64,000 nucleotides of DNA. It comes from Macrostomum lignano (lineage: Eukaryota). The position numbers were made by a program, and so were the translations under genes. Positions 14,057 through 40,065 of this stretch are shown here, piece after piece (the first letter of the stretch is position 1; every line of letters begins with the position of its first letter). The stretch spans positions 62,001 through 126,000 of the forward strand of contig NIVC01001239.1 in assembly GCA_002269645.1 (NCBI GenBank), read 5' to 3'. Below the pieces are notes generated by a model, which was not told the DNA's origin, did no database searches, and saw only the letters and a list, made by a program, of their open reading frames with translations.

Positions 14057-14240
14057 GAAAACCTGACACCGGCACACTTAGCAAATCAGACCAATCAAGT
14101 TGAGATATTTGAGCTGCTAAAGCCGCTCACAACCTCTTCAGCGTGGCAAGCCGAAGTCAAAGACGACGCTGACAGGGCTCCAGAATCCGCCATATCGGAG
14201 GATTTAGCCACCGTGATTTCCGAGTCAGACGATGAAACAG
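14057..14240 (+). CDS. ank: Ankyrin exon, last ANK repeat plus start of linker (ENLTPAHLA...ISESDDETG), phase 0-1
   Basis: ttccag|GAA...ACAG|gtaaat; SDDE motif typical of the ankyrin post-repeat linker. Confidence 0.92.
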
Positions 14241-15380: not shown

Positions 15381-15458
15381 CGCACATGACGGAGGCGACA
15401 TTCACGCAGTTGCCAGCCTCGCCAATATTCTCGCGACCAGACTCTGGAGTTGTAGCCG
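15381..15458 (+). CDS. ank: Ankyrin linker exon (AHMTEATFTQLPASPIFSRPDSGVVA), 78 nt, phase 1-1
   Basis: ccgcag| acceptor, G|gtaagc donor, open in the required phase. Confidence 0.7.
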
Positions 15459-15549
15459 GTAAGCTTCGTTCACGATGATGATTCAAGTAAATTATACATA
15501 AAATTCTGACCATAAAATCCTAAATGTCTCAACATTTTCTAATTTAAAG

Positions 15550-15635
15550 ACGGGCAAGCAAAAGATCAACAGCAGCAGCAGCAGAAGCAAAATCAACTGC
15601 AAGTTCCTGGTGCCTCTCAAACAAATGTGAATCAA
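15550..15635 (+). CDS. ank: Ankyrin linker exon, Gln-rich (DGQAKDQQQQQQKQNQLQVPGASQTNVNQ), phase 1-0
   Basis: ttaaag| acceptor, CAA|gtaagt donor. Supplies the phase 1-to-0 change needed to reach the ZU5 exon. Confidence 0.75.
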
Positions 15636-15654
15636 GTAAGTTATGACACCCTGA

Positions 15655-16160
15655 CTTACCCTCTCTCCCTTACCCTCTCTCCCTTACCCTCTCTCTCCCT
15701 TACCCTCTCTCTCCCTTACCCTCTCTCTCCCTTACCCTCTCTCTCCCTTACCCTCTCTCTCCCTTACCCTCTCTCCCTTACCCTCTCTCCCTTACCCTCT
15801 CTCCCTTACCCTCTCTCCCTTACCCTCTCTCCCTTACCCTCTCTCCCTTGCCCTCTCTTCCTTACCCTCTCTTCTTTAAACTCTTTCCCTTACCCTCTCT
15901 TCCTTACCCTCTCTTCCTTACCCTCTCTTCCTTACCCTCTCTTCCTTACCCTCTCTTCCTTACCCTCTCTTCCTTACCCTCTCTTCCTTACCCTCTCTTC
16001 CTTACCCTCTCTTCCTTAAACTCTTTCCCTTACCCTCTCTCCCTTACCCTTTATCCCTTACCCTCTCTCCCTTACCCTCTCTCCCTTAGACTATTTCCCT
16101 TACCCTCTCTTCCTTAACCTCTCTTCCTTACCCTCTCTCTCTTACCCTCTCTCCTGTACC
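15655..16160. repeat. Polypyrimidine 14-16 bp minisatellite (CCCTTACCCTCTCT)
   Basis: Direct reading. Confidence 0.95.
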
Positions 16161-16584
16161 CTCTATTATTTTAGCACAATCGAGGTTGAATATGCTTCGA
16201 CAGACTCAAACACAGAATCCAATAGAATGCCGATACTGTTGACAGCGGCTTTTCAGCTGCAATCAAAGATTAGTAAAAAAAATAGCCAACCCTACTCAGA
16301 TATGCAGAAAAGAGAAGCCTTGATGTTATACGAGCGTAAGGTTTTAGTATCGTTTCATACGAATGCTCCCCATTTTCATGACCATACTCGGTGCCACGCC
16401 CTGTAGGGAATCCATCTATTTCAGTTTTTCTTAGAACTATCAGATAATAATTCGATGACTTATTAATATTTTTTCTATACAACTAATTTGTTTGAAGCTA
16501 ACCTACAGGGTAATTAACAAATAAATTTTATCTCACACCTGTATCTCCCCTGTCTCTCTGACTCTCTGTTTCAAATCAAAACAG

Positions 16585-16736
16585 GCTGCAGTGCCGGAAC
16601 CCGAGTGGCAGAAGCAGTCAGCGGCTACGGCGGCTGCTTCAGTTCCCGTGCCAAATATTCAGCAGCTGGAGCCGAAACTATTGCTGCTTCAGCAGCAGCA
16701 GGAGACGCCAAGCGACCAGATGCCTGTGCTGACCAG
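16585..16736 (+). CDS. ank: Ankyrin linker exon (AAVPEPEWQKQ...DQMPVLT), phase 0-2
   Basis: aaacag| acceptor, ACCAG|gtgagt donor. AG+C gives Ser, producing PVLTS-FLVSFIVDARGG, comparable to canonical SG-FLVSF. Confidence 0.8.
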
Positions 16737-21665: not shown

Positions 21666-22722
21666 CTTCCTCGTGTCCTTCATCGTGGACGCGCGCGGCG
21701 GCGCCATGACTGGAGCGCGCTGCCCCGGCCTGCGCGTCGTGGTGCCGCCGAAAGCCGCTGGCGAGCCGCTGCGCCTCACCTGCCGCCTGCTACGGCCCGA
21801 CCGCCTGACCAGCCCGCCGCAGCTCTGCGACGGCGAGGGCCTCGCCAGCCGCATCCTCGAGCTCGGCGGAGGCGGTGTCGACGGCACGTTCCGATCGCCG
21901 ATTGTGCTGGAGGTGCCGCACATTGCCGCGCTGAGAAACGGTGAACGCGAGGTTGTGGTCTACCGCTCGGAGACTGGCGACGTCTGGAAGGAGCACCCAA
22001 CGGAAGCTGGCGGCCAGGACTCTGCTGCGGTGCTGGACGCACTCAGTGGCCTTCCTGGACCTTTGGAGACGTCCGAAGAGCTGCGAGAGAAGCGAATAAT
22101 CAGAATCCTGACCACTAGCATGCCTCAGTACTTCGCCTTGGTGACTCGACCTCGCCAAGAGACGGCTCTGATCGGTCCCGAAGGCGGCGCCATCACCTCC
22201 ACTGGTGTCAGCCGTCAGGTGCAGGCCATATTTCCAGACGGCGCATTGACTAAAAAGATTCGCGTCGCAATCCAGGTGATGCCGATTCCATTGGAGACAG
22301 CCGCACAGCTTGCCCAGGTGGTGTCAGCTTCGCCTATTGTCACCATCGAGCCGAGGCGTCGAAAGTTTCACAAGCTGATCACGCTGACGATCCCGGTGCC
22401 ACCGAGACCGTCAGGCCAGACCGATAATTGGACGCTGCGCCTCATGTGCAGCATCACTGGCGGAGCTCAGGTAGCCGCCTGGGAAGACATCACGGGTTCG
22501 ACGCCGTTGTCCCGAGTCAAGGAGTGCGTGTCTTTCACTACAACAGTCAGCGCCAGGTTCTGGCTGTTGGACTGTCCAAACGGCACGGATGCAGTCTCGC
22601 TGGCGACTAGAATTTACCGAGATTGCCTGCCGGTGCCCTACATCGGACGATTTGTTGTCTACGCTAAACGAAATCGACCGGACGGTGCAATGTTGCGTTG
22701 CCTTTGCGTCACTGACGATAAG
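21666..22722 (+). CDS. ank: Ankyrin spectrin-binding region exon: ZU5-ZU5 and start of UPA, phase 2-0
   Basis: ccacag|C TTC...AAG|gttagt; FLVSFIVDARGG, GEGLASRILE, SPIVTIEPRRRKFHK, SITGG, SFTTTVSARFWL, LRCLCVTDDK. Confidence 0.98.
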
Positions 22723-23106: not shown

Positions 23107-24091
23107 CTGGATAAAACCCTGGAATGCGCGGAAGGCTACGAACGCAAAGCAGAATCTGCCGAATTTGAGGTACTCGACGGTCGAAAACGCTGGGTGACGG
23201 ATGCGCCAGGAAATCTGACAGTCATTGCTGACCACGAAGCAACACTGGAGAAGCAACAGCAGTCGGAGCAGCAGCAGCGTCAATCGCTAACAATGACAGT
23301 CCGGCCGTTCCGCGAGAACCGCCTGTCCTGCCAGGTCCGCGTAAGTCAGCCCGACCGACCGGCCGTTGGACGACTCGTCCTGGAGCCGGCATCGGGCAGC
23401 GCCTGCAGTGTCGAGTTGGCACTGCCCGAATACGATGGGCCGCCGATGCCGACGCCGCCGCAGTCAGACCGGCAGCAGCCCCAGAGACTCTCCGATCCGT
23501 CGTCGAGAGAAACTACGCCGGAACCGTTGCGTCTCACCAGCGACACCATCGCTCGAGCTGAGCTGGACATTCGCGACGTGGCGGAGAAGCTGCGCTCAGA
23601 CTGGTCTCTGGCAGCTCAAGAGCTCGGCCTGACCGACTCGGACATCGCTGAAATAGCTGCTAATCGGCCAGATGATCGAGAGCGCGCCATGTCGATGCTG
23701 CGTCGATGGCGCCGAATCAAAGAGCCCAGTGGTGAGGCAACCGGCAACGCGCTCGAGGCCGCTCTGCGACGCATTGGACGAGATGACGTAGTGAAGCAGT
23801 GCATGCGCAACGTGCAGTACGTTACAGAGCCAAAGGAGCACGAGCAGGCGCGAGCGCTGCTCGACGGTAAAGACGATTCAAAAACGGCTGTCGAGGTGCA
23901 CGAGGCCGACGTGGTGCCTCAGCTGGACGAGACACGGCCGAAACCAAAGTCGGCGCCGACCGCCGAGGAAGCGGAGGCAGCTCGTCGCGTGAAGATCGAC
24001 GCCTACGTTGGACTGCTTGAGTCGCTGGACCAGATGCTCCCAGATCCGGAGTCCTTGATTAACTCACATGATCGGGACTGGAAGGACGCAG
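23107..24091 (+). CDS. ank: Ankyrin exon: rest of UPA plus death domain (about 23550-23805), phase 0-1
   Basis: cttcag|CTG GAT AAA ACC (LDKTLE, canonical VDKTLE), PFRENRL, death-domain DWSLAAQELGL...ML..W...LEAALRRIGRDDVV; GCAG|gtgagt donor. Confidence 0.96.
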
Positions 24092-24468: not shown

Positions 24469-24621
24469 AGCCTATCGAAGAGGAAGCGATCTCGGCCAAA
24501 GCCCGAAAACAGGTGGAATCGGGGGAAGCAAGCAGTCCGACTCAGGTGGAAGAGCTGCTGTCAAAATTAGACTCGCTACCGGATCAATCCATGGCTCCGG
24601 AGGCTGAGCCGCCAGAAGATG
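24469..24621 (+). CDS. ank: Ankyrin tail exon, 153 nt, phase 1-1 (EPIEEEAISAK...EAEPPED)
   Basis: ccacag| and G|gtaaat; open acidic frame. Confidence 0.75.
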
Positions 24622-24730
24622 GTAAATAAAATTTGCGCTTCAATAAATGATATTGCATGCTGGTACGGGCTATGCCACCTAGGAACTTGGGTCAAGGATA
24701 AACGCGATTCAATTCTTTCCCGTATTTTAG

Positions 24731-24796
24731 TGGTCGAAGTTCCGAAATCAGTGGCGGTCAGTCATACTGCCCTACCTGCAGCAGTGCCAAAGTCAG
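24731..24796 (+). CDS. ank: Ankyrin tail exon, 66 nt, phase 1-1 (VVEVPKSVAVSHTALPAAVPKS)
   Basis: attttag| and CAG|gtaagt. Confidence 0.7.
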
Positions 24797-25259
24797 GTAA
24801 GTCTAATCAAGCATAATTCTTTTACGCTGAAATTTTTCCTTATATTTGACGATACTCGCGCACCTTAATTTACGTTGTGTAGCAACAACAACTGACAAGT
24901 TTTCCTAAGCACTTTTACTGTTTTATTGTTGTTTCATAGAGACAAAAGTAATGACTGATTATTCTGAGTGCCTGACTCGCCTGGCTTTAGTTTATGCTCG
25001 AATAATCATATTTTCGTAATTTTGAAAGCACAAAACGTCGCAGCCTAAACCAGAGGTGCGAAGCGAATAATTTTACTTAGCTAGCACTCTACAATTAACT
25101 GTTGTCAGCAGCACCTCCTCGCACTGCAGTTATTTTGTACTATGTGAGCACGAACTATCTTATGGTGAGTAGGCCTATTCTTGTTAAAAACGTAATATAT
25201 TAAATACCAGATGGTTGCCATGGATCAACGATTTTTTAACTCAAATTTTTTCATTGCAG

Positions 25260-25334
25260 ATAAGCTTTTTCGAGATGCATCGTTTGAGCAACAGGCATTG
25301 GAAATTGAAGACGATGTTGCAAGCGCCTGCGGAG
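25260..25334 (+). CDS. ank: Ankyrin tail exon, 75 nt, phase 1-1 (DKLFRDASFEQQALEIEDDVASACG)
   Basis: ttttttcattgcag| and GAG|gtagga. Confidence 0.75.
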
Positions 25335-25468
25335 GTAGGACTCAGGCAGTTAGGGCTCTGCTAGACTTCGTGCGCCTGCCTGTGTGTCTGATACTTTTAA
25401 GAAAAAATGTTTTAGAAACAATAGAAACGTTAATGTTCATTTTTTATAGTGGAGAATTATTTTTCTAG

Positions 25469-26002
25469 GCCAGACTAGCTCAAATATTGAGCTGAGGCAA
25501 AAGCAGCCGCAGCAGCCGCAGCAGTGGGACTCGGGTAGTTGGACAACACCAGACTCTGAGCGACATCACAAGAAGCAGCTGTCGCACTCGTCCACGCCTG
25601 GAATCGACACCTCCTCCTTGGAGGCGTCAACAATGTCCGACATCTCGTCGTCTTACACGCCGGATCTGACCGAAGTAACAGCCATAGCCGGTCACCACGG
25701 CACAGTTGGCAGCTTGGACAGGTACCGCCGCTCTCTCGTGTCCGAGTCCGGCCCAGAGGATGCCACCCTGACCACCACGGACACAACTACTAGCTTTGAC
25801 TCACTGGGCGATCATTCCACCGCTGGCGCAGCGGCCAGTGCAAGGAGAACCGTGTCCAGCGCCTCCCAGTTCATTGAAGACGACATCGAAAGTTATCCGC
25901 TGTACAGTTCCGACACTGAAAGGCAGCGAAGGCGGCTGCAACAGAGGCTGTCGTTGCGGATGCAGCGGCGCAGAGGAAACGATGGATCAGGAGAAGGAGG
26001 AG
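25469..26002 (+). CDS. ank: Ankyrin tail exon, 534 nt, phase 1-1; read-through of the donor ends at TAG 26005-26007
   Basis: tttttctag| acceptor; open Ser/Thr-rich frame (ORF 25618-26007 is its 3' part); GAG|gttagc donor; AATAAA at 26059-26064. Confidence 0.8.
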
Positions 26003-26538
26003 GTTAGCTGCCAATTACTGCCTGTGTTCTGCGGCTGCTGCTGCTGCCGCTGCTCCACAATAAAAAAGCTAACGAATGAGCTTTGCCGCTTATTTGCCGT
26101 TCTGCAACCATTCCGCTAAGTCTAAGATAAAGCATTTCTATGGAAACGCATGCGTGTAGGGCACTAAAATACGCTCCGAAATTGTTCAAAATTTATAAGT
26201 GTGTAACATGGCTGCACTATTTGTCTTGGCTTCCTGTTTAAGAATCCTAGCTATTAAAAATACCTAAAAACCTTTTCTTAGGAAAACGTATATTTGCACG
26301 AACAATATTTAACGGTGGAAGTCGCATTTTTTAAATAATAAAGTAGAACTGGCCACATTTACATGCCAGCGCATTAATGTATTCGAAATCTGACATTCAA
26401 ATATTACAACCTTCTCGCATTCCGCCCCCACTCCATCCTGCCCATTCCATCTCTATCGACACGCACCAACTCCATTACCAAAAATCAACCCTCTCGAACC
26501 AATCTCCGAAAACGCCTCGGTGAACATTCAATCTGCAG

Positions 26539-29500
26539 CCGGTCAGAAGCGTCCAACTCCGCCAGCCAGCTTGCCGCTCACGCCAGCCAAAGCTGCCGCT
26601 GCCAACATCGAGCCTGCCAAAGTCGACGCCAATTCATCCGATGCTGCTACCGACGCCGAACGCCGACGCTCTTTGAACTCGTTAATGATTCGCGCGATGG
26701 AGCACGAGGACAGTCTCCGTTCGGAGATGCGCAGTCTGAGTATTGATGAAGCGCTAAACGCGCCGGACGCAACGCCGCAGGTTGAAGAGAAGTCAATCAG
26801 CGAGGAAATGTCAAGGCCGATATCGCCGATGGAAACGGTCGACTCCGAGATGGCCACCCCGGTGCAGGATGTTGCTCCAAGTTTTGAATCTGCCAACACA
26901 GCCGCCTCAGCAGCCGCCGAATTCTCTAGTCAGGAGGCACTTGAGGAAGCGTTTGAAAAAGCCCGAGAGCTCCCCTCAGCGCAGTCGTCTTCCTACGCTT
27001 CAGCCACAGAAGAAGAAGACGACGATGAGGCTGCCGGGCGAAGCTGGACGGAGCCGCAGCTCCAGTCATCCAGTCTGTTTCACTCCGGCGGCATCCGGCC
27101 GGAGGAGCTCGTGTCACCCACGAAAGAAGAAACTGCAGAGCCCGGACGTCGTTTCTCGGCGCTTGTATCCTCTGAATACACCTACCGTAGGATGGAGGAG
27201 AAGCTGGACAGTCCAGTGCAGAGTCCAGTGGACGCTTACAAGAAGTTTCCTCCTCAGCACCAGCAACCTGCTGCGCCGGAGCAGTCACCTCAGCCTGCCC
27301 CATCTCAAGAGGATGAAAATTCGGCATTCGATGCCAGACTACAACGAGCCGAAGAGCTGATGGCTGAGGCAGAGTGCGTCATTGTCAACCGCTACACTGG
27401 TATTGACGAAGATATTGAACAGGTTGGCCTTGAGATTGATCGCGTCATACCTGACAGCATGCTGGTGTCAACTACAACAGCAGCCTCAAAGTCTCCGGAT
27501 CGTCTGGAACCTGATTGGAGTCGGCAGCTGAGCGAACCCGAGGCTGCTGTGCCAGAGGAAGATGCTGAAGGTGTCGCCAAAGAAACCGAGACGCAAATTC
27601 TAGCTGTGAAATTACGTAAGCACAACGATACATTCTCTGGTTCTGTGGAGTACGAACATTTCGCTGAGCCTGAAGAGCCCGAAGCTCGTGCTCAGCCAGA
27701 AGAAACTGAAGCTCGTGCTAAGCCAGAAAAGACTGAAGCTCATGCAGAGCCTGAGGAGACTGAAGCTCATGCAGAGCCAGAGGAGACTGAAGCTCGTGCT
27801 AAGCCTGAGGAGACTGAAGCTCGTGCTGAGCCTGGAGAGACTGAAGCTCGTGCTGAGCCTGAAGAGACCGAAACTCGTGCTGAGCAAGAAGAGACCGAAG
27901 CTCGTCCTGAGCCTGAGGAGACTGAAGCTCGTGCTGAGCCAGAAAAGACTGAAGCCCGTGCTGAGCCTCAAGAGATTGAATCTGGTGCTCAGCCAAAAGA
28001 GACTGAAGCTCGTGCTGAGCCAAAGGAGACTGAAGCTCGCGCTGAGCCAGAAGAGACTGAAGCTCGCGCTGAGCCAGAAGAGACTGAAGCTCGTGCTGAG
28101 CCAAAGGAGACTGAAGCTCGTGCTGAGCCTGAGGAGACTGAAGCGCGAGCTGAGCCTCAAGAGCCTGAAGCTCGTGCTGAGCCTGAAGAGACTGAAGCTC
28201 CTGGTGAGCCTGAAGAGACCGAAGCTCGTGCTGAGCCTGAAGAGACTGAAGCTCGTGCTGAGCCTGAAGAGACTGAAGCTCGTACTGAGCCAGAAGAGAC
28301 TGAAGCTCATGCTGAGCCAGAAGATACTGAAGCTGGTGGTGAGACAGAAAAGACTGAAGCTCGTGCTGAGCCTGAAGAGACTAAAGCTCATGCTGAGCCT
28401 GAAGAGACTGAAGCTCGTGCCGAGCCTGAAGAGACTGAAGCTGGTGCTCAGCGAGAAGAGACTGAAGCTCATGCAGAGCCAGAGGAGACTAAAGCTCGTG
28501 CCGAGCCTGGAGAGACTGAAGCTGGTGCTCAGCCAGAAGAGATTGAAGCTCGTGCTGAGCAAAAGGAGACTGAAGCTCGTGCTGAGCCTGAAGAGACCGA
28601 AACTCGTGCTGAGCAAGAAGAGACCGAAGCTCGTGCTGAGCCAGAGGAGACTGAAGCTCGTGCTGAGCCTGAAGAGACTGAAGCTCGTGCTGAGCCTGAA
28701 GAGACTGAAGCTCCTGGTGAGCCTCAAGAGACTGAAGCTCATGCTGAGCCAGAAGATACTGAAGCTGGTGGTGAGACAGAAAAGACTGAAGCTCGTGCTG
28801 AGCCAGAAGAGACTGAAGCTCATGCTGAGCCAGAAGAGACTGAAGCTCGTGCCGAGCCTGAAGAGACTGAAGCTCGTGCTGAGCCAAAGGAGACTGAAGC
28901 TCGTGCTGAGCCTGAAGAGACTGAAGCTCGTGCAGAACTAGATGAAACACCAGGTACAATTCAGTCTGAGAAGACACCAACTGATCCTGCGGAGACATCA
29001 GCTACAATTGCTCCTGAGCAGACATCTGCACTCACTGAGACCCAAGTTCTTGCTGTACAATTGCGTCAAACAGATGAGCTGACTGAAGCCATTGCCAACA
29101 AGGACATTGTCGTGTCAGACAGAACCACTGGATCACAGTTCGTTCCGAGTGAGAATGAAACTGAAGCCCGTGATGAAAGAGAGAAGACTGAAGCTCATGC
29201 AGAGCCTGAGGAGACTGAAGCTCATGCAGAGCCTGAGGAGACTGAAGCTCATGCAGAGCCTGAGGAGACTGAAGCTCATGCAGAGCCTGAGGAGACTGAA
29301 GCTCGTGCTGAGCCAAAGGAGACTGAAGCTCGTGCTGAGCCTGAAGAGACTGAAGCTCGTGCAGAACTAGATGAAACACCAGGTACAATTCAGTCTGAGA
29401 AGACACCAACTGATCCAGCGGAGACATCAGCTACAATTGCTCCTGAGCAGACATCTGCACTCACTGAGACCCAAGTTCTTGCTGTACAATTGCGTCAAAC

Positions 29501-32500
29501 AGATGAGCTGACTGAAGCCATTGCCAACAAGGACATTGTCGTGTCAGACAGAACCACTGGATCACAGTTCGTTCCGAGTGAGAATGAAACTGAAGCCCGT
29601 GATGAAAGAGAGAAGACTGAAGCTCATGCAGAGCCTGAGGAGACTGAAGCTCATGCAGAGCCTGAGGAGACTGAAGCTCATGCAGAGCCTGAGGAGACTG
29701 AAGCTCATGCAGAGCCTGAGGAGACTGAAGCTCATGCAGAGCCTGAGGAGACTGAAGCTCATGCAGAGCCTGAGGAGACTGAAGCTCATGCAGAGCCTGA
29801 GAAGACTGAAGCTCGTGCTGAGCCTGAAGACACTGAAGTTCGTGCTGAGCCAGAAGAGACTGAAGCTCGTGCTGAGCCTGAAGACACTGAAGTTCGTGCT
29901 GAGCAAGAAGAGACTGAAGCTCGTGCTGAGCCTGAAGACACTGAAGTTCGTGCTGAGCCAGAAGAGACTGAAGCTCCTGGTGAGCCTGAAGAGACCGAAG
30001 CTCGTGCTGAGCCTCAAGAGACTGAAGCTCGTGCTGAGCCAGAAGAGACTGAAGCTCATGCTGAGCCAGAAGATACTGAAGCTGGTGGTGAGACAGAAAA
30101 GACTGAAGCTCGTGCTGAGCCAGAAGAGACTGAAGCTCATGCTGAGCCAGAAGAGACTGAAGCTCGTGCCGAGCCTGAAGAGACTGAAGCTGGTGCTCAG
30201 CGAGAAGAGACCGAAGCTCATGCAGAGCCAGAGGAGACTAAAGCTCGTGCCGAGCCTGGAGAGACTGAAGCTGGTGCTCAGCCAGAAGAGATTGAAGCTC
30301 GTGCTGAGCAAAAGGAGACTGAAGCTCGTGCTGAGCCTGAAGACACTGAAGCTCGTGCTGAGCCTGAAGAGACCGAAGCTCGTGCTGAGCCTCAAGAGAC
30401 TAAAGCTCGTGCTGAGCCTGAAGACACTGAAGCTCGTGCTAAGCCTGAGGAGACTGAAGCTCGTGCTGAGCCTGAAGAGACTGAAGCTTATGCTGAGCCT
30501 CAAGAGACTGAAGCTGGTGCTCAGCCTGAAGAGACCGAAGCTCGTGCTGAGCCTCAAGAGACTGAAGAGACTGAAGCTCGTGCTAAGCCTGAGGAGACTG
30601 AAGCTCGTGCTGAGCCTGAAGAGACTGAAGCTTATGCTGAGCCTCAAGAGACTGAAGCTGGTGCTCAGCCTGAAGAGACCGAAACTCGTGCTGAGCAAGA
30701 AGAGACCGAAGCTCGTGCTGAGCCAGAGGAGACTGAAGCTCATGCAGAGCCTGAGGAGACTGAAGCTCGCGCTGAGCCAGAAGAGACTGAAACTCGTGGT
30801 GAGCCTGAGGAGACTGAAGCTCGCGCTGAGCCAGAAGAGACTGAAGCTCGCGCTGAGCCAGAAGAGACTGAAGCTCGTGCTGAGCCAAAGGAGACTGAAG
30901 CTCGTGCTGAGCCTGAGGAGACTGAAGCTCGTGCTGAGCCAAAGGAGACTGAAGCTCGTGCTGAGCCTGAAGCTCGCGCTGAGCCAGAAGAGACTGAAGC
31001 TCGTGCAGAACTAGATGAAACACCAGGTACAATTCAGTCTGAGAAGACACCAACTGATCCTGCGGAGACATCAGCTACAATTGCTCCTGAGCAGACATCT
31101 GCACTCACTGAGACCCAAGTTCTTGCTGTACAATTGCGTCAAACAGATGAGCTGACTGAAGCCATTGCCAACAAGGACATTGTCGTGTCAGACAGAACCA
31201 CTGGATCACAGTTCGTTTCGAGTGAGAATGAAACTGAAGCCCGTGATGAAAGAGAGAAGACTGAAGCTCATGCAGAGCCTGAGGAGACTGAAGCTCATGC
31301 AGAGCCTGAGGAGACTGAAGCTCATGCAGAGCCTGAGGAGACTGAAGCTCATGCAGAGCCTGAGGAGACTGAAGCTCATGCAGAGCCTGAGGAGACTGAA
31401 GCTCATGCAGAGCCTGAGGAGACTGAAGCTCGTGCTGAGCCTGAAGACACTGAAGTTCGTGCTGAGCCAGAAGAGACTGAAGCTCGTGCTGAGCCTGAAG
31501 ACACTGAAGTTCGTGCTGAGCCAGAAGAGACCGAAGCTCGTGCTGAGCAAGAAGAGACTGAAGCGCGAGCTGAGCCTCAAGAGCCTGAAGCTCGTGCTGA
31601 GCCTGAAGAGACTGAAGCTCCTGGTGAGCCTGAAGAGACCGAAGCTCGTGCTGAGCCTGAAGAGACTGAAGCTCGTACTGAGCCAGAAGAGACTGAAGCT
31701 CATGCTGAGCCAGAAGATACTGAAGCTGGTGGTGAGACAGAAAAGACTGAAGCTCGTGCTGAGCCTGAAGAGACTAAAGCTCATGCTGAGCCTGAAGAGA
31801 CTGAAGCTCGTGCCGAGCCTGAAGAGACTGAAGCTGGTGCTCAGCGAGAAGAGACTGAAGCTCATGCAGAGCCAGAGGAGACTAAAGCTCGTGCCGAGCC
31901 TGGAGAGACTGAAGCTGGTGCTCAGCCAGAAGAGATTGAAGCTCGTGCTGAGCAAAAGGAGACTGAAGCTCGTGCTGAGCCAGAGGAGACTGAAGCTCGT
32001 GCTGAGCCTGAAGAGACTGAAGCTCGTGCTGAGCCTGAAGAGACTGAAGCTCCTGGTGAGCCTCAAGAGACTGAAGCTCATGCTGAGCCAGAAGATACTG
32101 AAGCTGGTGGTGAGACAGAAAAGACTGAAGCTCGTGCTGAGCCAGAAGAGACTGAAGCTCATGCTGAGCCAGAAGAGACTGAAGCTCGTGCCGAGCCTGA
32201 AGAGACTGAAGCTGGTGCTCAGCGAAAAGAGACCGAAGCTCATGCAGAGCCAGAGGAGACTAAAGCTCGTGCCGAGCCTGGAGAGACTGAAGCTGGTGCT
32301 CAGCCAGAAGAGATTGAAGCTCGTGCTGAGCAAAAGGAGACTGAAGCTCGTGCTGAGCCTGAAGAGACCGAAACTCGTGCTGAGCAAGAAGAGACCGAAG
32401 CTCGCGCTGAGCCAGAAGAGACCGAAACTCGCGCTGAGCCAGAAGAGACTGAAGCTCGTGCTGAGCCTGAGGAGACTGAAGCTCGTGCTGAGCCTGAAGA

Positions 32501-35500
32501 GACCGAAGCTCGTGCTGAGCCTGAGGAGACTGAAGTTCGTGCTGAGCCAGAGAAGACTGAAGCTCGTGCTGAGCCAGAGGAGACTGAAGCTCGTGCCGAG
32601 CCTGAGGAGACTGAAGCTCGTGCCGAGCCTGAGGAGACTGAAGCTCGTGCCGAGCCTGAGGAGACTGAAGCTCGTGCCGAGCCTGAGGAGACTGAAGCTC
32701 TTGCTGAGCCAGAAGCGGCCGAAGCTCGTGCTGAGCCAGAAGAGACTGAAGTTACTGAAGACTTATTGAAGACATCTGTACTGACTGAGACACAAGTTCT
32801 TCCTGTAGAGTTACGTCAGCCAAGTGACCTTGAAGCAGTTACTAACAAGGATATTGTTGCTTCAGACAGAACCACTGGACCAGAATTCGTTACCAGCAAA
32901 AATGACCCAGAAGTATTTATCAAACAAAACCTACCAGAAGAAGACACATCGGGTGGCATTCAAAACAAAGATGAAGTGACATATAAAGTAGAAAATTTTG
33001 AGTTTGATTTGGTAAAAAAGCTGGTGAACGACGCAATTGAAACGGCTTTACGTGCTGAAGAGTCCAGATGCAGAGGCATTTTCGAGCAAAATGGTACCGC
33101 ACAGAAAGAGCCTCACTCTGTTGAGACCGAGCCAAAAGAGGAGCCTCGCACTGCTGAGTCCGTCAAGACCGAGCCCAAGTCACAGGAGGAGCCTCGCACC
33201 GTTGAGTCCCTTGAGACAGAGCCACAGGAAGAGCCTCGCACTGTTGACTCCTTTGAGCCCGAGCCACAGAAGGAGCCTCGCACTGTTGAGTCTGTTGAGA
33301 CCGAGCCACAGGAGGAGCCTCGCACTGTTGACTCCCTTGAGCCCGAGCCACATGAGGAGCCTTGCACGGTTGAGTCCCTTGAGACAGAGCCACAGGAGGA
33401 GCCTCGCACTGTTGAGTCCGTTGAGACCGAGCCCGATGCACAGGATGAGCCTCGCACTGTTGAGTCCGTTGAGACCGAGCCACAGGAGAAGCCTCGCACT
33501 GTTGACTCCCTTGAGCCCGAGCCACAGGAGGAGCCTCGCACTGTTGAGTCCCTTGAGCCTGAGTCACAGGCGGAGCCTCGCACTGTTGACTCTGTTGAGA
33601 CCGAGCCCGAGTCACAGGAGGAGCCTCGCACGGTTGAGTCCCTTGAGACAGAGCCACAGGAGGAGCCTCGCACTGTTGACTCCCTTGAGCCCGAGCCACA
33701 GGAGGAGCCTCGCACTGTTGACTCTGTTGAGACCAAGCCCGAGCCACAGGAGAAGCCTCGCACTGTTGACTCCCTTGAGCCCGAGCCACAGGAGGAGCCT
33801 CGCACTGTTGAGTCCCTTGAGCCTGAGTCACAGGCGGAGCCTCGCACTGTTGACTCTGTTGAGACCGAGCCCGAGTCACAGGAGGAGCCTCGCACGGTTG
33901 AGTCCCTTGAGACAGAGCCACAGGAGGAGCCTCGCACTGTTGACTCCCTTGAGCCCGAGCCACAGGAGGAGCCTCGCACTGTTGACTCTGTTGAGACCGA
34001 GCCCGAGTCACAGGAGGAGCCTCGCACTGTTGAGTCCCTTGAGACCGAGCCACAGGAGGAGCCTCGCACTGTTGAGTCCGTTAAGAAGCCTTGCATTTTT
34101 GAAATCACTGAGACGGAGTCTCAATTATTACCTGTTCAATTGATACTCCGATCCACTGGTTCACAGTTTACTGATGAAGAGGGTACTGACTTACAGGCTT
34201 TAGATAAGAAGACCGATACAGCAGTTCTCTCTGGAGTTGGAGAACGACCGCAGTCTGCTGCTTCTCATGATAATTTAGAGGAACAGCTAAAAACAACAGA
34301 TGCTCATAAGGATGCTGAGGAACAACCAGAAAGTGAGGAAATTCTTGAAAACTCTGAAGCAGCGTCTTCGCTTGAAAAAGTTTCAGAAATTGTGATTCAC
34401 GATGCAAAAACTTCGGATATGTCTGAGCATAAGGAAGAAAAGGGTGATGAGCCATCAAATGAAGAGCAGAATGTTGCAGAACTTAACGAAGTAAAATTAA
34501 AAGGTGTGGAGCAAGGCACTGCTCAATCAGATGACTTGTACTCAGATCAGAAAATCGATGACTCACTAATTGACGCCTGTGCGAGAGATTGTGTTCAAAA
34601 AGCTTTGATCGCCGCTTTAAAGAGCCTTTCGGGCGTTAGAAATTCAGTTGAGCACGAGGGCACTGAGACAGATTCGGTTCAAGAGCCCGAAGAAGCTGAA
34701 ACCCTTCTAGTTGAGCACAAGGACGCGATTCAAGAGCCCCAGGAAGCTGTGATTCTTTCGGTTGAGCACAAGGACACTGAGCCACAGCCGCTTCAAGAGC
34801 CTGAGGAACCTGAGATTCTTTCGGCTGAGCACAAGGACACTGAGCCACAGCCGCTTCAAGAGCCCGAGGAAGCTGTGACAAAGCAGGAAACAGAGCCTCT
34901 TCCCAATATGACTGAACCTGCATGCAGTGTTGCTAGAACTGAAACATTAGTGCTGGCCGTTCAACTAAGGAAATCAAGCGGTATGGACACTTTTGTATCG
35001 ACGGGTAACGATTTACGCGACACAGAGTCCCAGTTTATCGCGTCTCAACTTTCTCCGGGGGAGCTACCAGTTGAATACGAGTACAAGGACCCTGAGGAAC
35101 AGTCAGTGGAGTACAAAGAATCTGAGGAGCAGCGTGTTGACTACCAAGACTCCGAAGAGAAGCCTGTGGACTACAGAAAGACTGAAGAGCAGCCTGTTGA
35201 GTACAAAGAAACTGAAGAGCAGCCTGTTGAGTACAAAGAAACTGAGGAGCAGCCTGTTGAGTACAAAGAAACTGAAGAGCAGTCTGTTGATTACACGGAG
35301 ACTGAAGAGCAGCCTGTTGAGTACAGAGAGACTGAAGAGCTGCCTGTTGAGTCCATCGAGGCTGATGAGCTTGCAGATGATGGACGAAAGGCTGAAGCAG
35401 GTTCACCCTCACAAATGCAGAGTACATCTCCTACTCGTAAGGAAGGCGAAGAGGGTCATAAACTTTCAGAGTCTCTTCAGTCTGAGCAGCTGGACGAAGA

Positions 35501-38123
35501 TGAGGCCCAAGTCGTCGAGGATGAAGAAAGCGACGCCCGTTACGAAGATGATTTTGATGCCGAAGGCGAGGATGACGAAAGACCAGCGGGTCGTGAAGGC
35601 TCGCTACAACAGGAACAGGAGGCAGCAAGTGATGAAGAAGCTGCTGTACCACAATCGGACCAGAATATTTTTCGTCACCAAACTAAACCAGCTGTCGCTG
35701 AGCCTGAGGCTCGTATTCTACTCGGTCCGGACGCCTTTATACTTGTTGAGCAGTCTGATGAGGCTGCTTCTGCTATTGTTAACCCTGCGGTTTCTGCTGG
35801 CCCGAGCGAGCTGCCAGAATACGACGAGGAGATTCCTGGCGAATCCGCTCAGAGTCCTGAATCATTTGAATCCGTCATCAAGCGGTCTCTGCCGGCGCTG
35901 GCCAATCTCAGCCTGGCGGCGTCAACGGCGGAGGAGCCCAGAAACCTGGACGAGTCGGTTGGGACGAGCCCTGTCTCTCCTGGACTGGCTAGGGGCACTT
36001 CTGCGATGAGCGGCACCAACTCCGCTTCGCCTGACGAGTGCCAGTTTCAGTTGGAGGATCCGGAGGGCCAGTTGGAAGCGCAACGCCTAGACACTGGAAC
36101 CATGGAAGCGTCTGTGGTTACGCTTGAGGACTCCGAGACCAGCCAGCCGCCAATGGCTCATTCCTCCGAACTGCCACGGGACGCGTCTTCGCTTAGCCAG
36201 GACGCCTCCAAGTCTAGCGAAGTTCTTAGCTCCGGCATCAGTGTAACCGACAACCGGTTTGGCCCTTCGGCAACTGCTGATGACATTCCCAGCATTGTAG
36301 GACAAGATGACAGCGGCTTTATACTGCTAACTCGAGATGACGCCGCTTCAGATATTGACTTCGAGAGCGGCGGAGAAGCTGAAGAAGAAACGGAAGTTGC
36401 TCGCAGACAATTTGATGACGCAACGGATGTGTCAACTTCTCTGGTTAGTGACGTTGCCTCCACGCTAGCTGGACAGGACGACGATACGGTGCAGAACTCA
36501 GAATGTGAGGAAGAGACGGCCGATGCGGATGATGCAAGAGTACTTTTAGAAGAAGCACAACGACGTTCAACCCTATCTTCATCAACCACATCGGGTGGAC
36601 CAAAAAGCCCTACAATTTCTGGTGAGGCGTTCGAGGAATTGGAGGTGCCGTCGGATCAGAGCGACGAAGAAGCGGCTCGTCAGTTGGCTTCTCGTGCTTT
36701 GAGCTCCGCTGCGGATGCCGTCGAGTCGGAGGAATTCGAGCGCACAGCACAGGAGAGGCTGGAGCGCTCGCTACAAGAGGAAGAACTAGCGTTGGATTTC
36801 GAAAAGGCTGCCGAGCAGATAATGATGAAGCAAGGCGAAAAGGATGACGTTGAAGATGAGAATGCCGAGAGCCAAGAATACGAAGGCTTTCGGACCTCGG
36901 TTGGCGACATCGACTCGGAGCTGTTCCAGGGAGCTGTGTATCAGGAAGGAGACGACTACGCTGAAGAATCAGATGAAGAAGACGACGAGGATGATGACGA
37001 GGGCGAAGAACCACTCGGCGCTTCTCCCAAAGCCGCGTACGTTTTCATGACGAATAAGGCTGTTGAACAGGTGGTCATCGATGACAATCTTCTGTCGCCA
37101 ATCATGGAGTTAAAGGAAACACCGGAGAGCTCTCCAGAGCAGCGCTTGTCTCAACAACAACGAAAACAGCAACAACCGCAGCCGGAGAAGCATCTCCAGC
37201 CGTCAATGCAGCAGCAGCTACAAGTGGCCAAGTCTCCACCAAAAATCGGCTTCGAAATCGAGCCGCCACTTACTGAAGAAGATGAAGAGACGCCAACAGC
37301 AGCTGGACTTTCCTCCTCGTTTGGCTCGAAAAAATCGGACCGTTTCCCGGAGATGCCTCAACAGGAGAAGCAGGTCGACAAAAGCGAAGAATCTTACAGG
37401 CCGAGTGCGCAGCAGAAGTCTAACTCGCCTGTCGATTCGGGTGAATCCGACTTCGAGATGATCGCCGCACCGCAAGAAGACGCGGCATCGGGCTCGCTGA
37501 CCGAGTTTGAGCGGCTCGAGCGGGAGCTGGAGACAGCGGAGGAGCCTGCAGAGTCGGTAATGGAGGATGTCGAAGAAGTTGACGAGGACATTCAACAAGA
37601 TGATGAAGAGGATTCTGTCGAACCAGACCAGGCCGACAGTCAGATCTATTCCGAAGCGTCTAAGATTGCTGAAGCGCTGAAAGTGCCAGAGGTTCGGTTC
37701 GAGGAAGCGGACGCTGGTAAAGACGCCGATAGTCTTGGTGAAGAGGACGAGGAGGACGAAGAGCCGGTCGCGGCCGCCGTAGCTCAGAGGCGATTCCCGC
37801 CCGGCCGGTCGAAAAAGATTGCCCCGGTGATGGAGTCGTCGATGGCGTCGTCTGTGTGCGCACCGAGTGAGGCCGACTCACTCACCGAGGAGGCCCAGCT
37901 GGCCATGACCCGCAGTGTCGATAGCATCGATGCGGAGGCGTCCACGACAGCAGGCGGCGATGGCAGCAGCGGCGGTGGCGGCTGGACTCTAGGCTACTCA
38001 ATGAGCACCGACAAGGTCCGGGTGGTACCGGAGCCTGGCCCAGGGATGGTTAGTTCGACTGACAGCCTCGACTGGGAGACTTCAGCTGGAGCAGAGACTA
38101 CGTCACCTGAGGATACTCTATAG
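26539..38123 (+). CDS. ank: Giant ankyrin exon (11,585 coding nt, about 3,860 aa), acidic E/T/A/P/S-rich, 3' of the death domain, ends in TAG
   Basis: Uninterrupted 3867-aa ORF; ctgcag| acceptor in phase 1 matching upstream donors; position directly after ankyrin tail exons. Confidence 0.92.
27660..32755 (+). repeat. Coding 27-bp tandem repeat (AEPEETEAR/H) with three about 220-bp unique spacers and higher-order duplications
   Basis: GCTGAGCCTGAAGAGACTGAAGCTCGT consensus; spacer ELDETPG...SENETE at about 28936, 29365 and 31009. Confidence 0.95.
33125..34085 (+). repeat. Coding 42/48-bp tandem repeat (EPQEEPRTVES/DSLET)
   Basis: Translation and nucleotide periodicity. Confidence 0.93.
35090..35360 (+). 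repeat. Coding 30-bp tandem repeat (EEQPVEYKET)
   Basis: Translation and nucleotide periodicity. Confidence 0.9.
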
Positions 38124-38707
38124 GTACAGAGAGTCGAGAAAGAAGTCTCAAGTCCCTTCTTACTATCCCCCTGTCCGAGTCCCTTGCCCTGGAGTGGCAG
38201 CTTTAGCAGCTACTGCATCGGGTGTCTGATGCCTCGATAGCTGCACAAGAGCTGCCAGTTTGGCTAAGTCTAACACCGCTGCTGTTGTATATAGCGAGTA
38301 TTGATAAATCTGTTGTTTATGTTGTCGCAATCTAACACTGTCGGTGAGTCCTAATCTTTTCATTCACTAATTACTCACTTGAGTTTCTAGCTTGTATTTT
38401 TAAGTTAGTGCAGCACAGGGCAATCACTTACTTCATGTTTTATTTTCTGACAATTTTTTTCTAGACGCTTTAAAACATTCTCAGAATGCTACTATACTAC
38501 TGTCTGCAAGTAGTGCATTGTTAGAATCGTCAAAAACGAAGAAAAACGAAAATTGTTTCATGGAACAACCAATAACAGTTGACTTCTACTTAGATAATAA
38601 AAATGAGTATAAATTCCCTTAGTGAGGCTAAACCAGATTGACGCAGTTGAGCGGACGAGACAGAAGATTCCTGCCAGTTGGACGCAAAAGCATTGAATTA
38701 TTTCTAG

Positions 38708-38953: not shown

Positions 38954-38989
38954 GTGAGATACTCATGGGCAGTTCAGCATGAGTCATAA

Positions 38990-39547: not shown

Positions 39548-39651
39548 AAATGTCTCTAATCAGTATGGACGAAGACTATGTAGTTGAAATTGATCCTAGA
39601 GAGCACGATCACTTCCTGTCCCAAGGAATACCAGAAGAATTTCGTGAATAG
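39548..39651 (+). CDS. ank: Probable ankyrin late tail exon (EMSLISMDEDYVVEIDPREHDHFLSQGIPEEFRE*); may instead splice at 39643
   Basis: attgcag| acceptor in phase 1, open acidic frame; weak C|gtgaat donor or TAG at 39649-39651. Confidence 0.55.
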
Positions 39652-40036: not shown

Positions 40037-40065
40037 ACGGCACTCCTCCGGCAGCAGCGCGATGA
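40037..40065 (+). CDS. Possible terminal ankyrin exon (xGTPPAAAR* in phase 1)
   Basis: ccatttttcag| acceptor followed by a short GC-rich patch, then AT-rich UTR-like sequence; frame uncertain. Confidence 0.3.

What the first reader, a model, noticed from the sequence alone, without database searches (positions are those of the whole stretch)
26539..38123. Giant ankyrin: 11.6-kb exon downstream of the death domain gives an isoform of at least 5,670 aa
Seen: one unbroken phase-1 exon of about 3,860 codons after ANK-ZU5-ZU5-UPA-DD. The summed exons 7533-38123 give 17,013 nt = 5,671 codons including the stop. Known: giant ankyrins organise axons. Vertebrate AnkG/AnkB giant exons lie between UPA and DD, whereas C. 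elegans UNC-44 AO13 carries its giant S/T/E/P-rich segment C-terminal to the DD. Inference: this is an UNC-44-like, post-DD giant neuronal ankyrin in a lineage (possibly flatworm) where it may be unannotated or split by gene predictors.
Basis: partly seen in the sequence, partly recalled or inferred. Interest (0 to 1): 0.8.

Follow-up and report, generated by a model that had tools for sequence, protein, structure and literature searches.

The report
Flatworm giant ankyrin long exon
The 11.6-kb open reading frame is real and is almost certainly an alternatively used, unannotated last exon of an ankyrin gene of the flatworm Macrostomum lignano, giving a roughly 5,700-residue "giant ankyrin" of the kind already known across bilaterian animals.

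Summary
There is one uninterrupted + strand frame; the exon 26539-38123 holds 3,861 codons. It lies downstream of exons that Pfam identifies as ANK repeats, ZU5-ZU5-UPA and a death domain.

The window is Macrostomum lignano: GenBank PAA70403.1 matches its exons at 98-100%. In GenBank's RNA-seq-derived annotation, the short ankyrin isoform's last coding exon lies at 40037-40065. The giant ORF therefore sits unannotated inside an annotated ankyrin intron. UniProt model A0A1I8JDY8 already joins the ankyrin exons to its first ~389 residues.

Two paralogous M. lignano ankyrin loci carry homologous long ORFs in the same place. One RNA-derived GenBank model (PAA50710.1) runs continuously from ANK-ZU5-UPA into its long exon.

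All post-death-domain junctions are phase 1. The acceptor at 26539 is conserved in a paralog, and composition matches the published giant-exon signature.

A long exon after the death domain is the known ancestral bilaterian arrangement (Jegla 2016), and a planarian long-exon ankyrin isoform was noted in 2022. This is a new member of a known kind.

Direct transcript proof of the junction in this gene, and neuronal expression, remain untested.

The parts
7533..7634 (+). Coding exon SDPSQNFLRVARAGNLEKVLDYLECGTRIDTSNA, the start of the ANK-repeat domain. The upstream exon(s) encoding the 145-residue N-terminus of PAA70403.1 were not found in the window.
   Evidence: Canonical AG/GT sites in phase 0. 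The spliced chain reproduces P0243 with 0 mismatches over the 1,593 residues compared. tblastn of the N-terminal 145 aa gave no hit in the window.
9811..9927 (+). Alternative first coding exon (MSSSAAGTAK...FYDEK) used by GenBank short isoform PAA74996.1.
   Evidence: tblastn of P0123 residues 1-39, 97% identity.
10189..14240 (+). Four ANK-repeat exons: 10189-10665, 11129-12004, 12553-13155, 14057-14240. They hold about 21-22 repeats; about 80 residues are missing relative to the paralogs.
   Evidence: Pfam Ank families, E 1e-36 to 1e-78. Match to PDB 4RLV ankyrin-1/2 repeats, E 3e-179. Boundaries; alignment to the paralog.
15381..16736 (+). Three small linker exons: 15381-15458, 15550-15635, 16585-16736. 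They convert phase 1 to phase 2 between the ANK and ZU5 exons.
   Evidence: Needed to reproduce P0243 and P0123.
21666..22722 (+). Exon encoding ZU5-ZU5 and the start of UPA (the spectrin-binding supermodule).
   Evidence: Pfam ZU5 9.7e-30 (two stretches) and UPA_2 1.1e-08. About 50-57% identity to ankyrins across animals over most of the exon, up to 63% over 84% of it for one unnamed ENA protein.
23107..24091 (+). Exon encoding the rest of UPA plus the death domain. Its donor is phase 1.
   Evidence: Pfam UPA_2 1.5e-13 and Death 4.2e-13. The boundary at 24091 is fixed by P0243.
24469..24796 (+). Two small exons after the death domain, 24469-24621 and 24731-24796, both phase 1 in and phase 1 out.
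   Evidence: Present in P0123, P0243 and (the first) P0124.
25259..25381 (+). Candidate exon (DKLFRDASFEQQ...DFVRLP) used only by UniProt model A0A1I8JDY8, immediately before its entry into the giant ORF at 26547.
   Evidence: tblastn of P0124 residues 1123-1163, 97.6% identity. Splice-site context. Its status is unverified.
25469..26002 (+). Ser/Thr-rich exon directly upstream of the giant exon, phase 1 in and phase 1 out.
   Evidence: Canonical sites. The homologous exon (DSGTWATPDS...) is used in the RNA-derived paralog model PAA83415.1 and lies just upstream of that paralog's long ORF.
26539..38123 (+). Giant exon: 3,861 codons, own stop TAG at 38121-38123.
- Unique N-terminal part: 26539-27662.
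- 27-nt (9-aa, EPEETEARA) array, about 188 copies: 27663-32751.
- 42-nt array, about 22 copies: 33121-34086.
- 30-nt array, about 9 copies: 35079-35352.
- Unique tail with conserved islands: 35403-38120.
   Evidence: Intact (4,369 codons stop to stop) in the second M. lignano copy. Both unique ends are homologous to paralog long ORFs.
38596..38601 (+). AATAAA about 470 nt after the giant-exon stop; a possible poly(A) signal for a terminal-exon transcript.
   Evidence: Pattern match only. This is weak evidence.
39548..39651 (+). Conserved mini-exon (x)MSLISMDEDYVVEIDPREHDHFLSQGIPEEFRE with a stop at 39649-39651 and a phase-1 acceptor. It gives an in-frame alternative C-terminus when the giant exon is skipped.
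   Evidence: 69-80% amino-acid and 77.5% nucleotide identity to paralog loci, downstream of each long ORF. In-frame joins from 26002 or 24796.
40037..40065 (+). Last coding exon (DGTPPAAAR, stop) of the GenBank short isoforms. It places the giant ORF inside an annotated intron of the ankyrin gene.
   Evidence: Peptide located in the window and in L002. Phase-1 acceptor. The annotated gene span in L002 is 10001-43768.

Best explanation
The window holds most of a Macrostomum lignano canonical ankyrin gene, the copy corresponding to BOX15_Mlig001215g1. Region 26539-38123 is its alternatively used long last exon.

SHOWN
- The gene encodes ANK repeats, ZU5-ZU5-UPA and a death domain.
- Every junction after the death domain is phase 1. 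The donors are 24091, 24621, 24796 and 26002. The acceptors are 25469, 26539, 39548 and 40037. Any donor can therefore join any acceptor in frame.
- RNA-derived short isoforms splice from 24796 over the giant ORF to 40037.
- The giant ORF is intact in a second genomic copy and has homologous counterparts in the same position in two paralogous ankyrin loci.
- An RNA-derived paralog model joins the ankyrin core to its long exon.

INFERRED
- In some cells, by analogy with other animals probably neurons, the donor at 26002 (or 24796) joins 26539. This gives a protein of about 5,650-5,800 residues and about 630 kDa that ends at the exon's own stop.
- The added 3,861 residues are extremely acidic (pI about 4.1, net charge about -850) and largely disordered.
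- Seven short 'TETQVLAVQLR'-type modules separate arrays of short acidic repeats. A 900-residue tail follows, with about a dozen conserved islands, some of them predicted helices.
- By analogy with Drosophila Ank2-L/XL, C. elegans UNC-44 long isoform and vertebrate 480-kDa ankyrin-G and 440-kDa ankyrin-B, the N-terminal half anchors membrane proteins to spectrin. The long tail projects into the cytoplasm as a spacer and docking platform that couples the membrane skeleton to microtubules or other partners in axons.
For: - Domains.
- Source species and annotated isoforms.
- Giant ORF inside the annotated gene span, with the last exon of the short isoform downstream of it.
- UniProt model joining ankyrin exons to the first 389 residues of the ORF.
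- Paralog L003 has the same order (S/T exon, 3,827-codon ORF, mini-exon, terminal exon).
- Paralog L005: PAA50710.1 runs from ANK-ZU5-UPA into a 5.6-kb long exon. GenBank models derive from RNA-seq assembly, with repeat-overlapping transcripts excluded (PMC5730564).
- Phase-1 modularity, and the acceptor AATCT(R)CAG conserved at the homologous phase-1 position in L003.
- Coding constraint:
  - 1,799 unique codons open, P about 1e-36;
  - all four indels between the two copies are multiples of 3;
  - variation within the array is concentrated at third codon positions, with 168 synonymous against 183 non-synonymous codon differences from the consensus;
  - both unique ends are conserved between paralogs, about 68-70% at the N-terminal end and 44-79% in tail islands, while the repeats differ completely.
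- Protein-level similarity to the paralog begins just upstream of the first in-frame ATG, and no ATG precedes it in the open frame.
- Composition: S+E 32.4% and S/E/T/D/K/P 58.3%, against 31.8% in the core. This matches the published long-exon signature.
- AlphaFold: 728 of 906 tail residues below pLDDT 50, with confident helices at conserved islands.
Against: - No transcript or protein of this particular gene that crosses 26002/26539 was available. The only model that enters the ORF (A0A1I8JDY8) uses 25381->26547; the basis of that model is unknown to me.
- dN/dS between the two near-identical copies is only moderately below 1 (0.55-0.61, on 38 differences), so it is underpowered.
- The paralog models PAA50710.1 and PAA83415.1 show no Death-domain hit, so 'after the death domain' is demonstrated only for this gene's exon order.
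- One fetched paralog locus (L004) has no comparably long acidic ORF; its only ORF of 500 codons or more (518 codons, 38933-40486) reads as a simple repeat.
- The extension is strongly acidic and has almost no SxIP motifs. A direct microtubule or EB-protein contact like that of fly Ank2-XL or vertebrate ankyrin-G cannot simply be assumed.
Confidence: 0.85

Rival explanations
1. The long exon is part of the ankyrin mRNA, but the main junction is not the reader's 26002/26539. It could instead be 25381->26547 (as in the UniProt model) or 24796->26539, skipping the S/T-rich exon. The 11.6 kb may also be trimmed by internal splicing.
For: - P0124 uses 25381->26547.
- All donors after the death domain are phase 1, so 24796->26539 is also in frame (5,612 aa).
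- The annotated short isoforms of this gene skip 25469-26002.
Against: - The acceptor motif AATCT(R)CAG at 26538 is conserved at the homologous phase-1 position in paralog L003. There the S/T-rich exon lies immediately upstream and is used in an RNA-derived model.
- The 25381 donor that P0124 needs is phase 0, unlike every other junction in this region.
Confidence: 0.3
2. The ORF is an independent gene nested in an ankyrin intron. It would be transcribed from its own promoter or trans-spliced, and translated from the first in-frame ATG (LMIRAMEHED...).
For: - M. lignano uses spliced-leader trans-splicing widely, and primary transcripts often hold several genes (PMC5730564).
- The GenBank annotation does not join the ORF to the ankyrin gene.
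- The exon has its own stop and a downstream AATAAA.
Against: - There is no in-frame ATG in the first ~100 codons of the open frame, and similarity to the paralog starts before the first ATG.
- The homologous long exon is joined to ankyrin exons in an RNA-derived paralog model.
- The acceptor is phase-matched and conserved.
- The arrangement matches that of giant ankyrins in other phyla.
Confidence: 0.07
3. The ORF is not a functional coding exon. It would be a decaying or never-expressed remnant kept open by chance through expansion of stop-free tandem repeats, or an assembly artefact.
For: - About 55% of the ORF is tandem repeat. Other frames of the repeat arrays are also open for 400-550 codons.
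- dN/dS between the two copies is not far below 1.
Against: - The unique 1,799 codons are open in one frame only.
- An independent assembly has the same ORF intact with a different repeat number.
- Indels are in frame.
- Third-position variation is in excess within the array.
- Islands are conserved across paralogs.
Confidence: 0.04

Closest known systems
[quoted passage not shown] 2016, PMC5135030), for example Drosophila Ank2-L/XL and C. elegans UNC-44 long isoform
   Same: - One multi-kb exon on the same strand within a canonical ankyrin gene, placed after the death domain.
- Glu/Ser-rich composition (S+E 32%, S/E/T/D/K/P 58%).
- Tandem repeat arrays that are not conserved between lineages.
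- Short isoforms that skip the exon.
   Different: - Flatworms were not among the groups examined in that paper or its supplements.
- The repeat unit (27 nt) is shorter, and the copy number (about 188) higher, than the ranges reported there (36-228 bp, 5 to >160).
- No sequence similarity to any long exon outside M. lignano.
- The tail is far more acidic and Ala-rich than the Ser-rich average.
Schmidtea mediterranea ankyrin-3 homologue with 'isoforms with one long exon' (Neiro et al. 2022, PMC9522251)
   Same: A flatworm ankyrin gene with extensive alternative splicing and a long-exon isoform, read by the authors as support for ancestral giant ankyrins.
   Different: A different flatworm order. 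That paper gives only a one-sentence remark. I could not compare sequence, position relative to the death domain, or repeat content here, and the M. lignano tail found no planarian relative.
Vertebrate 480-kDa ankyrin-G and 440-kDa ankyrin-B
   Same: - Same core architecture, and a giant, largely unstructured insert encoded by one exon.
- Known function as an organiser of axonal membrane domains and microtubules.
- A conserved island in the tail (QDDSG-F-I-L-[LVI]-x3-[DE]) resembles their LIR core with an acidic residue at +7.
   Different: - The vertebrate exon lies between UPA and the death domain and is an internal cassette. Here it is after the death domain and carries its own stop.
- The +11 hydrophobic position of the vertebrate extended LIR is not matched.
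- SxIP motifs are nearly absent.
M. lignano paralogues: PAA50710.1 (BOX15_Mlig013172g1), and the long ORF in the PAA83415.1 locus (BOX15_Mlig030409g1)
   Same: - Homologous N-terminal blocks (RRxSLNxL...DATPxVEEKSIS; GGIRPEELxSP...EEKLDSPVQSP) and tail islands.
- The same 'LAVQLR' module.
- The same downstream mini-exon.
   Different: - Unrelated tandem repeats (HEEPAHAEEKVTEV; EEPSQQHLRESPVPT).
- Lengths of 5.6-11.5 kb.
- Those paralog protein models show no Death-domain hit.

Membership tests
Canonical ankyrin (ANK-ZU5-ZU5-UPA-DD adaptor) | N-terminal ankyrin-repeat solenoid homologous to that of ankyrin-R/B/G | tested here: met
   Pfam Ank families, E down to 1e-78. PDB 4RLV ankyrin-1/2, E 2.9e-179 for one exon.
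Canonical ankyrin (ANK-ZU5-ZU5-UPA-DD adaptor) | Exactly 24 ANK repeats | tested here: not met
   The repeat region is about 710 residues, or about 21-22 repeats. There are three gaps totalling about 80 residues relative to the 24-repeat-length paralog P0244.
Canonical ankyrin (ANK-ZU5-ZU5-UPA-DD adaptor) | ZU5-ZU5-UPA spectrin-binding supermodule | tested here: met
   Pfam ZU5 (two stretches) 9.7e-30. UPA_2 is split over two exons, 1.1e-08 and 1.5e-13.
Canonical ankyrin (ANK-ZU5-ZU5-UPA-DD adaptor) | Death domain after UPA | tested here: met
   Pfam Death 4.2e-13 in exon 23107-24091; 3e-12 in PAA70403.1.
Bilaterian giant ankyrin (long-exon isoform; Jegla 2016) | Exceptionally long ORF or exon inside the ankyrin locus, on the same strand | tested here: met
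   11,585-nt exon and 3,909-codon open frame; the next longest in the window is 554 codons. It lies within the annotated gene span.
Bilaterian giant ankyrin (long-exon isoform; Jegla 2016) | Protostome and ancestral position downstream of the death domain | tested here: met
   The death-domain exon ends at 24091 and the long exon starts at 26539.
Bilaterian giant ankyrin (long-exon isoform; Jegla 2016) | Composition bias: Ser+Glu about 25% or more, and S/E/T/D/K/P above 55%, against about 32% in the core | tested here: met
   32.4% and 58.3% in the long exon; 31.8% in the ANK-ZU5 core. Criterion quoted.
Bilaterian giant ankyrin (long-exon isoform; Jegla 2016) | The long exon is spliced to the ankyrin core exons in mature mRNA | tested here: inconclusive
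   - Not shown for this gene by any transcript.
- UniProt model A0A1I8JDY8 joins them.
- The RNA-derived paralog model PAA50710.1 joins its homologous exon.
- Phases and the acceptor are conserved.
Bilaterian giant ankyrin (long-exon isoform; Jegla 2016) | Neuron-specific expression and an axonal organising role | not testable with these tools
   No expression data were accessible.
UNC-44 AO13-type long segment (sequence homology) | Detectable homology of the long segment to that of UNC-44 or any other phylum | tested here: not met
   An exhaustive profile search of 1.84 billion representatives returned only the two M. lignano input proteins. The word-indexed search likewise. This is expected from Jegla 2016.
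Vertebrate ankyrin-G/B giant insert | Long exon inserted between UPA and the death domain as an internal cassette | tested here: not met
   UPA and the death domain are encoded on one exon (23107-24091). The long exon is downstream and ends in its own stop.
Extended LIR ('LIR core + C-helix') of giant ankyrins | Phi-x-x-Psi core preceded by acidic residues, acidic residue at +7, hydrophobic residue at +11, binding to Atg8/GABARAP | tested here: inconclusive
   The core F-I-L-[L/V/I] and the +7 Asp/Glu are conserved in three paralogs. The +11 position is Asp, Asp or His, not hydrophobic. Binding is not testable here. Criteria from PMC8727931.

The most novel reading that the evidence does not exclude
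The conserved tail islands are functional docking motifs shared in kind with vertebrate giant ankyrins. In particular, QDDSG-F-I-L-[LVI]-x3-[D/E] would be an Atg8/GABARAP-binding LIR. If so, Atg8-family binding would be an ancestral property of giant ankyrin tails, hidden by their fast sequence turnover. The M. lignano paralogs have conserved flanks, exchanged repeat cores and recurring 'LAVQLR' modules, and the animal is transgenic-capable. They would give a tractable system to dissect what the repeat spacer and the docking islands each do.
Probability: 0.12. Interest if true: 0.55.

Novelty: new member of a known kind. Interest (0 to 1): 0.3.

Why it matters
It extends the documented range of giant ankyrins to a macrostomid flatworm. 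That adds to the view that long-exon ankyrins after the death domain date to the bilaterian ancestor.

It also flags a concrete annotation gap. An 11.6-13.1 kb coding exon is missing from the GenBank annotation of a model flatworm, probably because repeat-overlapping transcripts were filtered out.

M. lignano can be made transgenic and is amenable to RNAi, so the exon gives a handle for testing what giant ankyrins do in a simple nervous system.

The three paralogous long exons have conserved ends and unrelated repeat cores. They are a neat natural experiment on which parts of these huge tails are under constraint. None of this overturns current understanding.

Tried and rejected
- A homolog search with the whole 3,860-residue exon timed out. 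I replaced it with searches using unique segments.
- Pfam finds nothing in the giant exon, the S/T-rich exon or the tail proteins.
- dN/dS between the window and the second genomic copy was meant as the selection test, but the copies differ by only about 1% (38 substitutions). It is underpowered. I relied instead on indel phase, within-array codon-position variation and paralog conservation.
- I first placed the death-domain exon donor at 24103 or 24172 and assumed no exon between 24174 and 25469. The annotated proteins showed the donor is at 24091 and that exons 24469-24621 and 24731-24796 exist.
- I looked for a phase-1 donor near the 3' end of the giant exon that could splice on to the mini-exon. 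There is none, and all three paralogous long ORFs end in their own stop soon after the conserved ...STDSLD. I therefore dropped the 'internal cassette' reading.
- Paralog locus L004 (P0125) has no comparably long acidic ORF; its one ORF of 500 codons or more reads as a simple repeat.
- The UniRef name 'ELMO domain-containing protein' for P0122 led nowhere: there is no ELMO hit.
- The exhaustive profile search for tail relatives in other species found none.
- SxIP (EB-binding) motifs are essentially absent.
- The N-terminal 145 residues of PAA70403.1 could not be located in the window.

Full report

Yes. The mechanical ORF list gives 26520..38123 on the + strand, 3,867 residues. The stop-to-stop open frame is 26394-38120, 3,909 codons; the next longest in any of the six frames of the window is 554 codons.

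About 55% of the ORF is tandem repeat:
- a 27-nt unit, about 188 copies, 27663-32751;
- a 42-nt unit, about 22 copies, 33121-34086;
- a 30-nt unit, about 9 copies, 35079-35352.

Other frames of these arrays are also open for a few hundred codons. I therefore tested the non-repetitive parts alone. They hold 1,799 codons with no stop in the coding frame. The other five frames show 3-71 stops per segment. Expectation from base composition is about 1e-36.

Upstream exons give Pfam hits to ANK repeats, two ZU5 stretches, UPA and a Death domain. The ANK exons also match the solved ankyrin-1/2 repeat structure 4RLV at E 3e-179.

**2. What organism, and what is annotated?**

A first search with the ZU5 exon gave nothing above 63% identity. 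That tool evidently lists only proteins up to about 1.75 times the query length.

A 2,011-residue spliced query then found Macrostomum lignano proteins at 97-100% identity. Cluster look-up added PAA70403.1 (BOX15_Mlig001215g1, 1,760 aa). It matches the window's exons at 98-100%. The window is therefore M. lignano.

Forcing the spliced translation to reproduce PAA70403.1 fixed the exon table:

| Exon(s) | Content |
|---|---|
| 7533-7634, 10189-10665, 11129-12004, 12553-13155, 14057-14240 | ANK repeats |
| 15381-15458, 15550-15635, 16585-16736 | linker |
| 21666-22722 | ZU5-ZU5 and start of UPA |
| 23107-24091 | rest of UPA plus death domain |
| 24469-24621, 24731-24796 | small exons after the death domain |
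| 40037-40065 | terminal coding exon (DGTPPAAAR, stop) |

That last exon lies downstream of the giant ORF. In the GenBank contig holding the sister copy (L002), the annotated gene spans 33.8 kb. The giant ORF lies wholly inside that span, with no gene called on it.

The GenBank models come from a genome-guided RNA-seq assembly from which transcripts overlapping repeat annotations were removed (PMC5730564). That plausibly explains the omission.

UniProt model A0A1I8JDY8 (P0124) does join the ankyrin exons to the first ~389 residues of the ORF. It uses a candidate exon at 25259-25381 and an acceptor at 26547, and breaks off in the repeats.

**3. Does the ORF belong to the ankyrin mRNA?**

No transcript of this gene was available to me. 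The case rests on five convergent lines.

(a) Phase. Every donor after the death domain (24091, 24621, 24796, 26002) and every acceptor (25469, 26539, 39548, 40037) is phase 1. The giant route and the skipping routes are therefore all in frame.

(b) Conserved acceptor. In paralog locus L003, the motif AATCT(R)CAG precedes the long ORF at the homologous position, also in phase 1. It lies directly downstream of the homologous S/T-rich exon, which an RNA-derived model uses.

(c) Paralog architecture. L003 has the order S/T exon, then a 3,827-codon acidic ORF, then the mini-exon, then the terminal exon. L005 has a 1,866-codon long ORF.

(d) Paralog transcript model. PAA50710.1 is RNA-derived and partial (2,938 aa). 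It runs without a break from ANK repeats, ZU5 and UPA into its long exon. That exon begins with the same conserved blocks as the window's exon (ARRHSLNxL...DATPxVEEKSIS; GGIRPEELxSP...EEKLDSPVQSP) and ends in the same tail islands.

(e) No usable start codon. There is no in-frame ATG in the first ~100 codons of the open frame, and similarity to the paralog starts just before the first ATG.

**4. Is it under coding constraint?**

- The second M. lignano copy is 96-99% identical in unique DNA. The sequenced DV1 line carries duplicated chromosomes. That copy has the ORF intact at 4,369 codons, 460 more than here, with the same first and last residues.
- The four indels in the unique tail are 33, 3, 3 and 3 nt.
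- dN/dS between the copies is 0.55-0.61, against 0-0.18 for the folded domains. It rests on 38 substitutions, so it is weak.
- Within the 27-nt array, entropy is highest at third codon positions (0.52, against 0.36 and 0.29). There are 168 synonymous and 183 non-synonymous codon differences from the consensus, far more synonymous than neutral change would give.
- Between paralogs the repeat cores are unrelated. The unique ends align co-linearly, at about 68-70% at the N-terminal end and 44-79% in the tail islands.

**5. Anatomy of the product**

That is 5,645 residues encoded in the window. With the annotated N-terminus it is 5,790 residues, about 633 kDa, pI 4.3.

The long-exon part has a net charge of about -852 and is 25.9% Glu.

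Seven copies of a short module (TETQ-V/L-L-A/P-V-Q-L-R...) punctuate the repeat arrays. The same module occurs in the paralog.

AlphaFold2 on the 906-residue tail gives pLDDT below 50 for 728 residues. Confident helices lie at about 420-480, 697-712 and 744-758, which coincide with conserved islands.

The long ORFs of this gene and both paralogs end in their own stop within 7-30 codons of the conserved ...STDSLD. No phase-1 donor is present there. The exon is therefore an alternative last exon, not a cassette. An AATAAA lies 470 nt downstream.

A strongly conserved 34-codon mini-exon follows each long ORF (39548-39651 here). It offers an alternative C-terminus for shorter isoforms.

**6. How it probably works**

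Shown: a canonical membrane-to-spectrin adaptor gene with modular phase-1 3' exons.

Inferred:
- Cell-type-specific choice of the 26539 acceptor appends a roughly 3,860-residue acidic, disordered extension.
- By analogy with fly Ank2-L/XL, worm UNC-44 and vertebrate giant ankyrin-G/B, this extension reaches from the cortical skeleton into the axoplasm and organises microtubules and membrane domains.
- The mode of contact is open. The tail is very acidic and has only two SxIP-like matches.
- One conserved island, QDDSG-F-I-L-[LVI]-x3-[D/E], fits an LIR core with the +7 acidic residue seen in the ankyrin-G/B extended LIR. It lacks the +11 hydrophobic residue. This is a lead, not a result.

**7. 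Comparison with what is known**

Jegla et al. 2016 found long exons in all bilaterian groups they examined. They found them downstream of the death domain in protostomes and echinoderms and proposed that position as ancestral. They also found no sequence homology between phyla, only a shared Ser/Glu-rich composition. Flatworms do not appear in their text or held supplements.

Neiro et al. 2022 noted in one sentence that a planarian ankyrin-3 homologue has isoforms with one long exon.

The present exon meets the positional and compositional criteria. As expected, it has no relative outside M. lignano in an exhaustive profile search.

It is a new member of a known kind. It is partly present in databases already, as the fragment A0A1I8JDY8 and the paralog PAA50710.1, both unnamed.

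**8. Verdict**

Novelty is modest. The useful outputs are:
- a corrected gene model for a transgenic-capable flatworm;
- an explanation for the annotation gap;
- the paralog comparison, which separates constrained islands from fast-turnover repeats.

Noticed in passing
window 1-4050 and 17600-18700: Kilobase-scale (GACA)n-type microsatellite blocks. They read as DRQT or CLSV repeats in all frames and produce many spurious ORFs of 150-550 codons on both strands.
   Followed up: no
window 15000-16200, 19500-20760, 43200-43800, 45000-45500, 61134-61900: Further simple or short tandem repeats in introns and intergenic DNA. This fits the reported high simple-repeat content of the M. lignano genome.
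   Followed up: no
window 39000-39450: A tandem repeat of roughly 45 nt (GGGTCATATAGTTGTGACACTATGAGCAGT...) in the intron between the giant exon and the mini-exon. Part of it (about 39200-39400) has no counterpart in the second M. lignano copy: identity falls to 0-0.6 there.
   Followed up: partly
window 26539-38123 versus L002 28990-42096: The two near-identical genomic copies of the gene differ by 460 codons in the giant ORF. All of the difference lies in the repeat arrays: 127 against 139 motif matches, 7 against 6 modules, and 20 against 14 copies of the 14-aa unit.
   Followed up: partly
window 12553-14240 (ANK exons): This ankyrin paralog lacks about 80 residues in the region of ANK repeats 18-22 relative to its 24-repeat-length paralogs. 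It also has a Ser/Thr-rich insertion (CFSSSSSTATTSVSGNSDIGVEG) in a repeat.
   Followed up: partly
window 62789-63516, minus strand: Open frames with a PAN domain (E 3e-08) and a borderline WSC domain (E 5e-06, just under the Pfam cut-off). Probably exons of a neighbouring secreted or surface protein gene.
   Followed up: partly
window about 45100-48400, minus strand: Acidic, Ser-rich open frames (for example 45580-45990 and 47605-47925). They correspond to a 298-residue minus-strand gene annotated in the sister contig (L002 48603-51907) and have no Pfam hit.
   Followed up: partly
P0122 (UniRef A0A1I8JMR8); L003 52840-56544: This UniRef entry is named 'ELMO domain-containing protein' but has no ELMO or other Pfam hit. 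It is in fact the tail of a paralogous ankyrin long exon plus the mini-exon.
   Followed up: yes
L003 27298-30604: All three + frames are open for about 1,040-1,080 codons over a Glu/Arg/Gly-rich simple repeat (EGRDGKGRDGE...) inside an intron of the paralogous ankyrin gene. It looks like repeat DNA rather than a second long exon.
   Followed up: no
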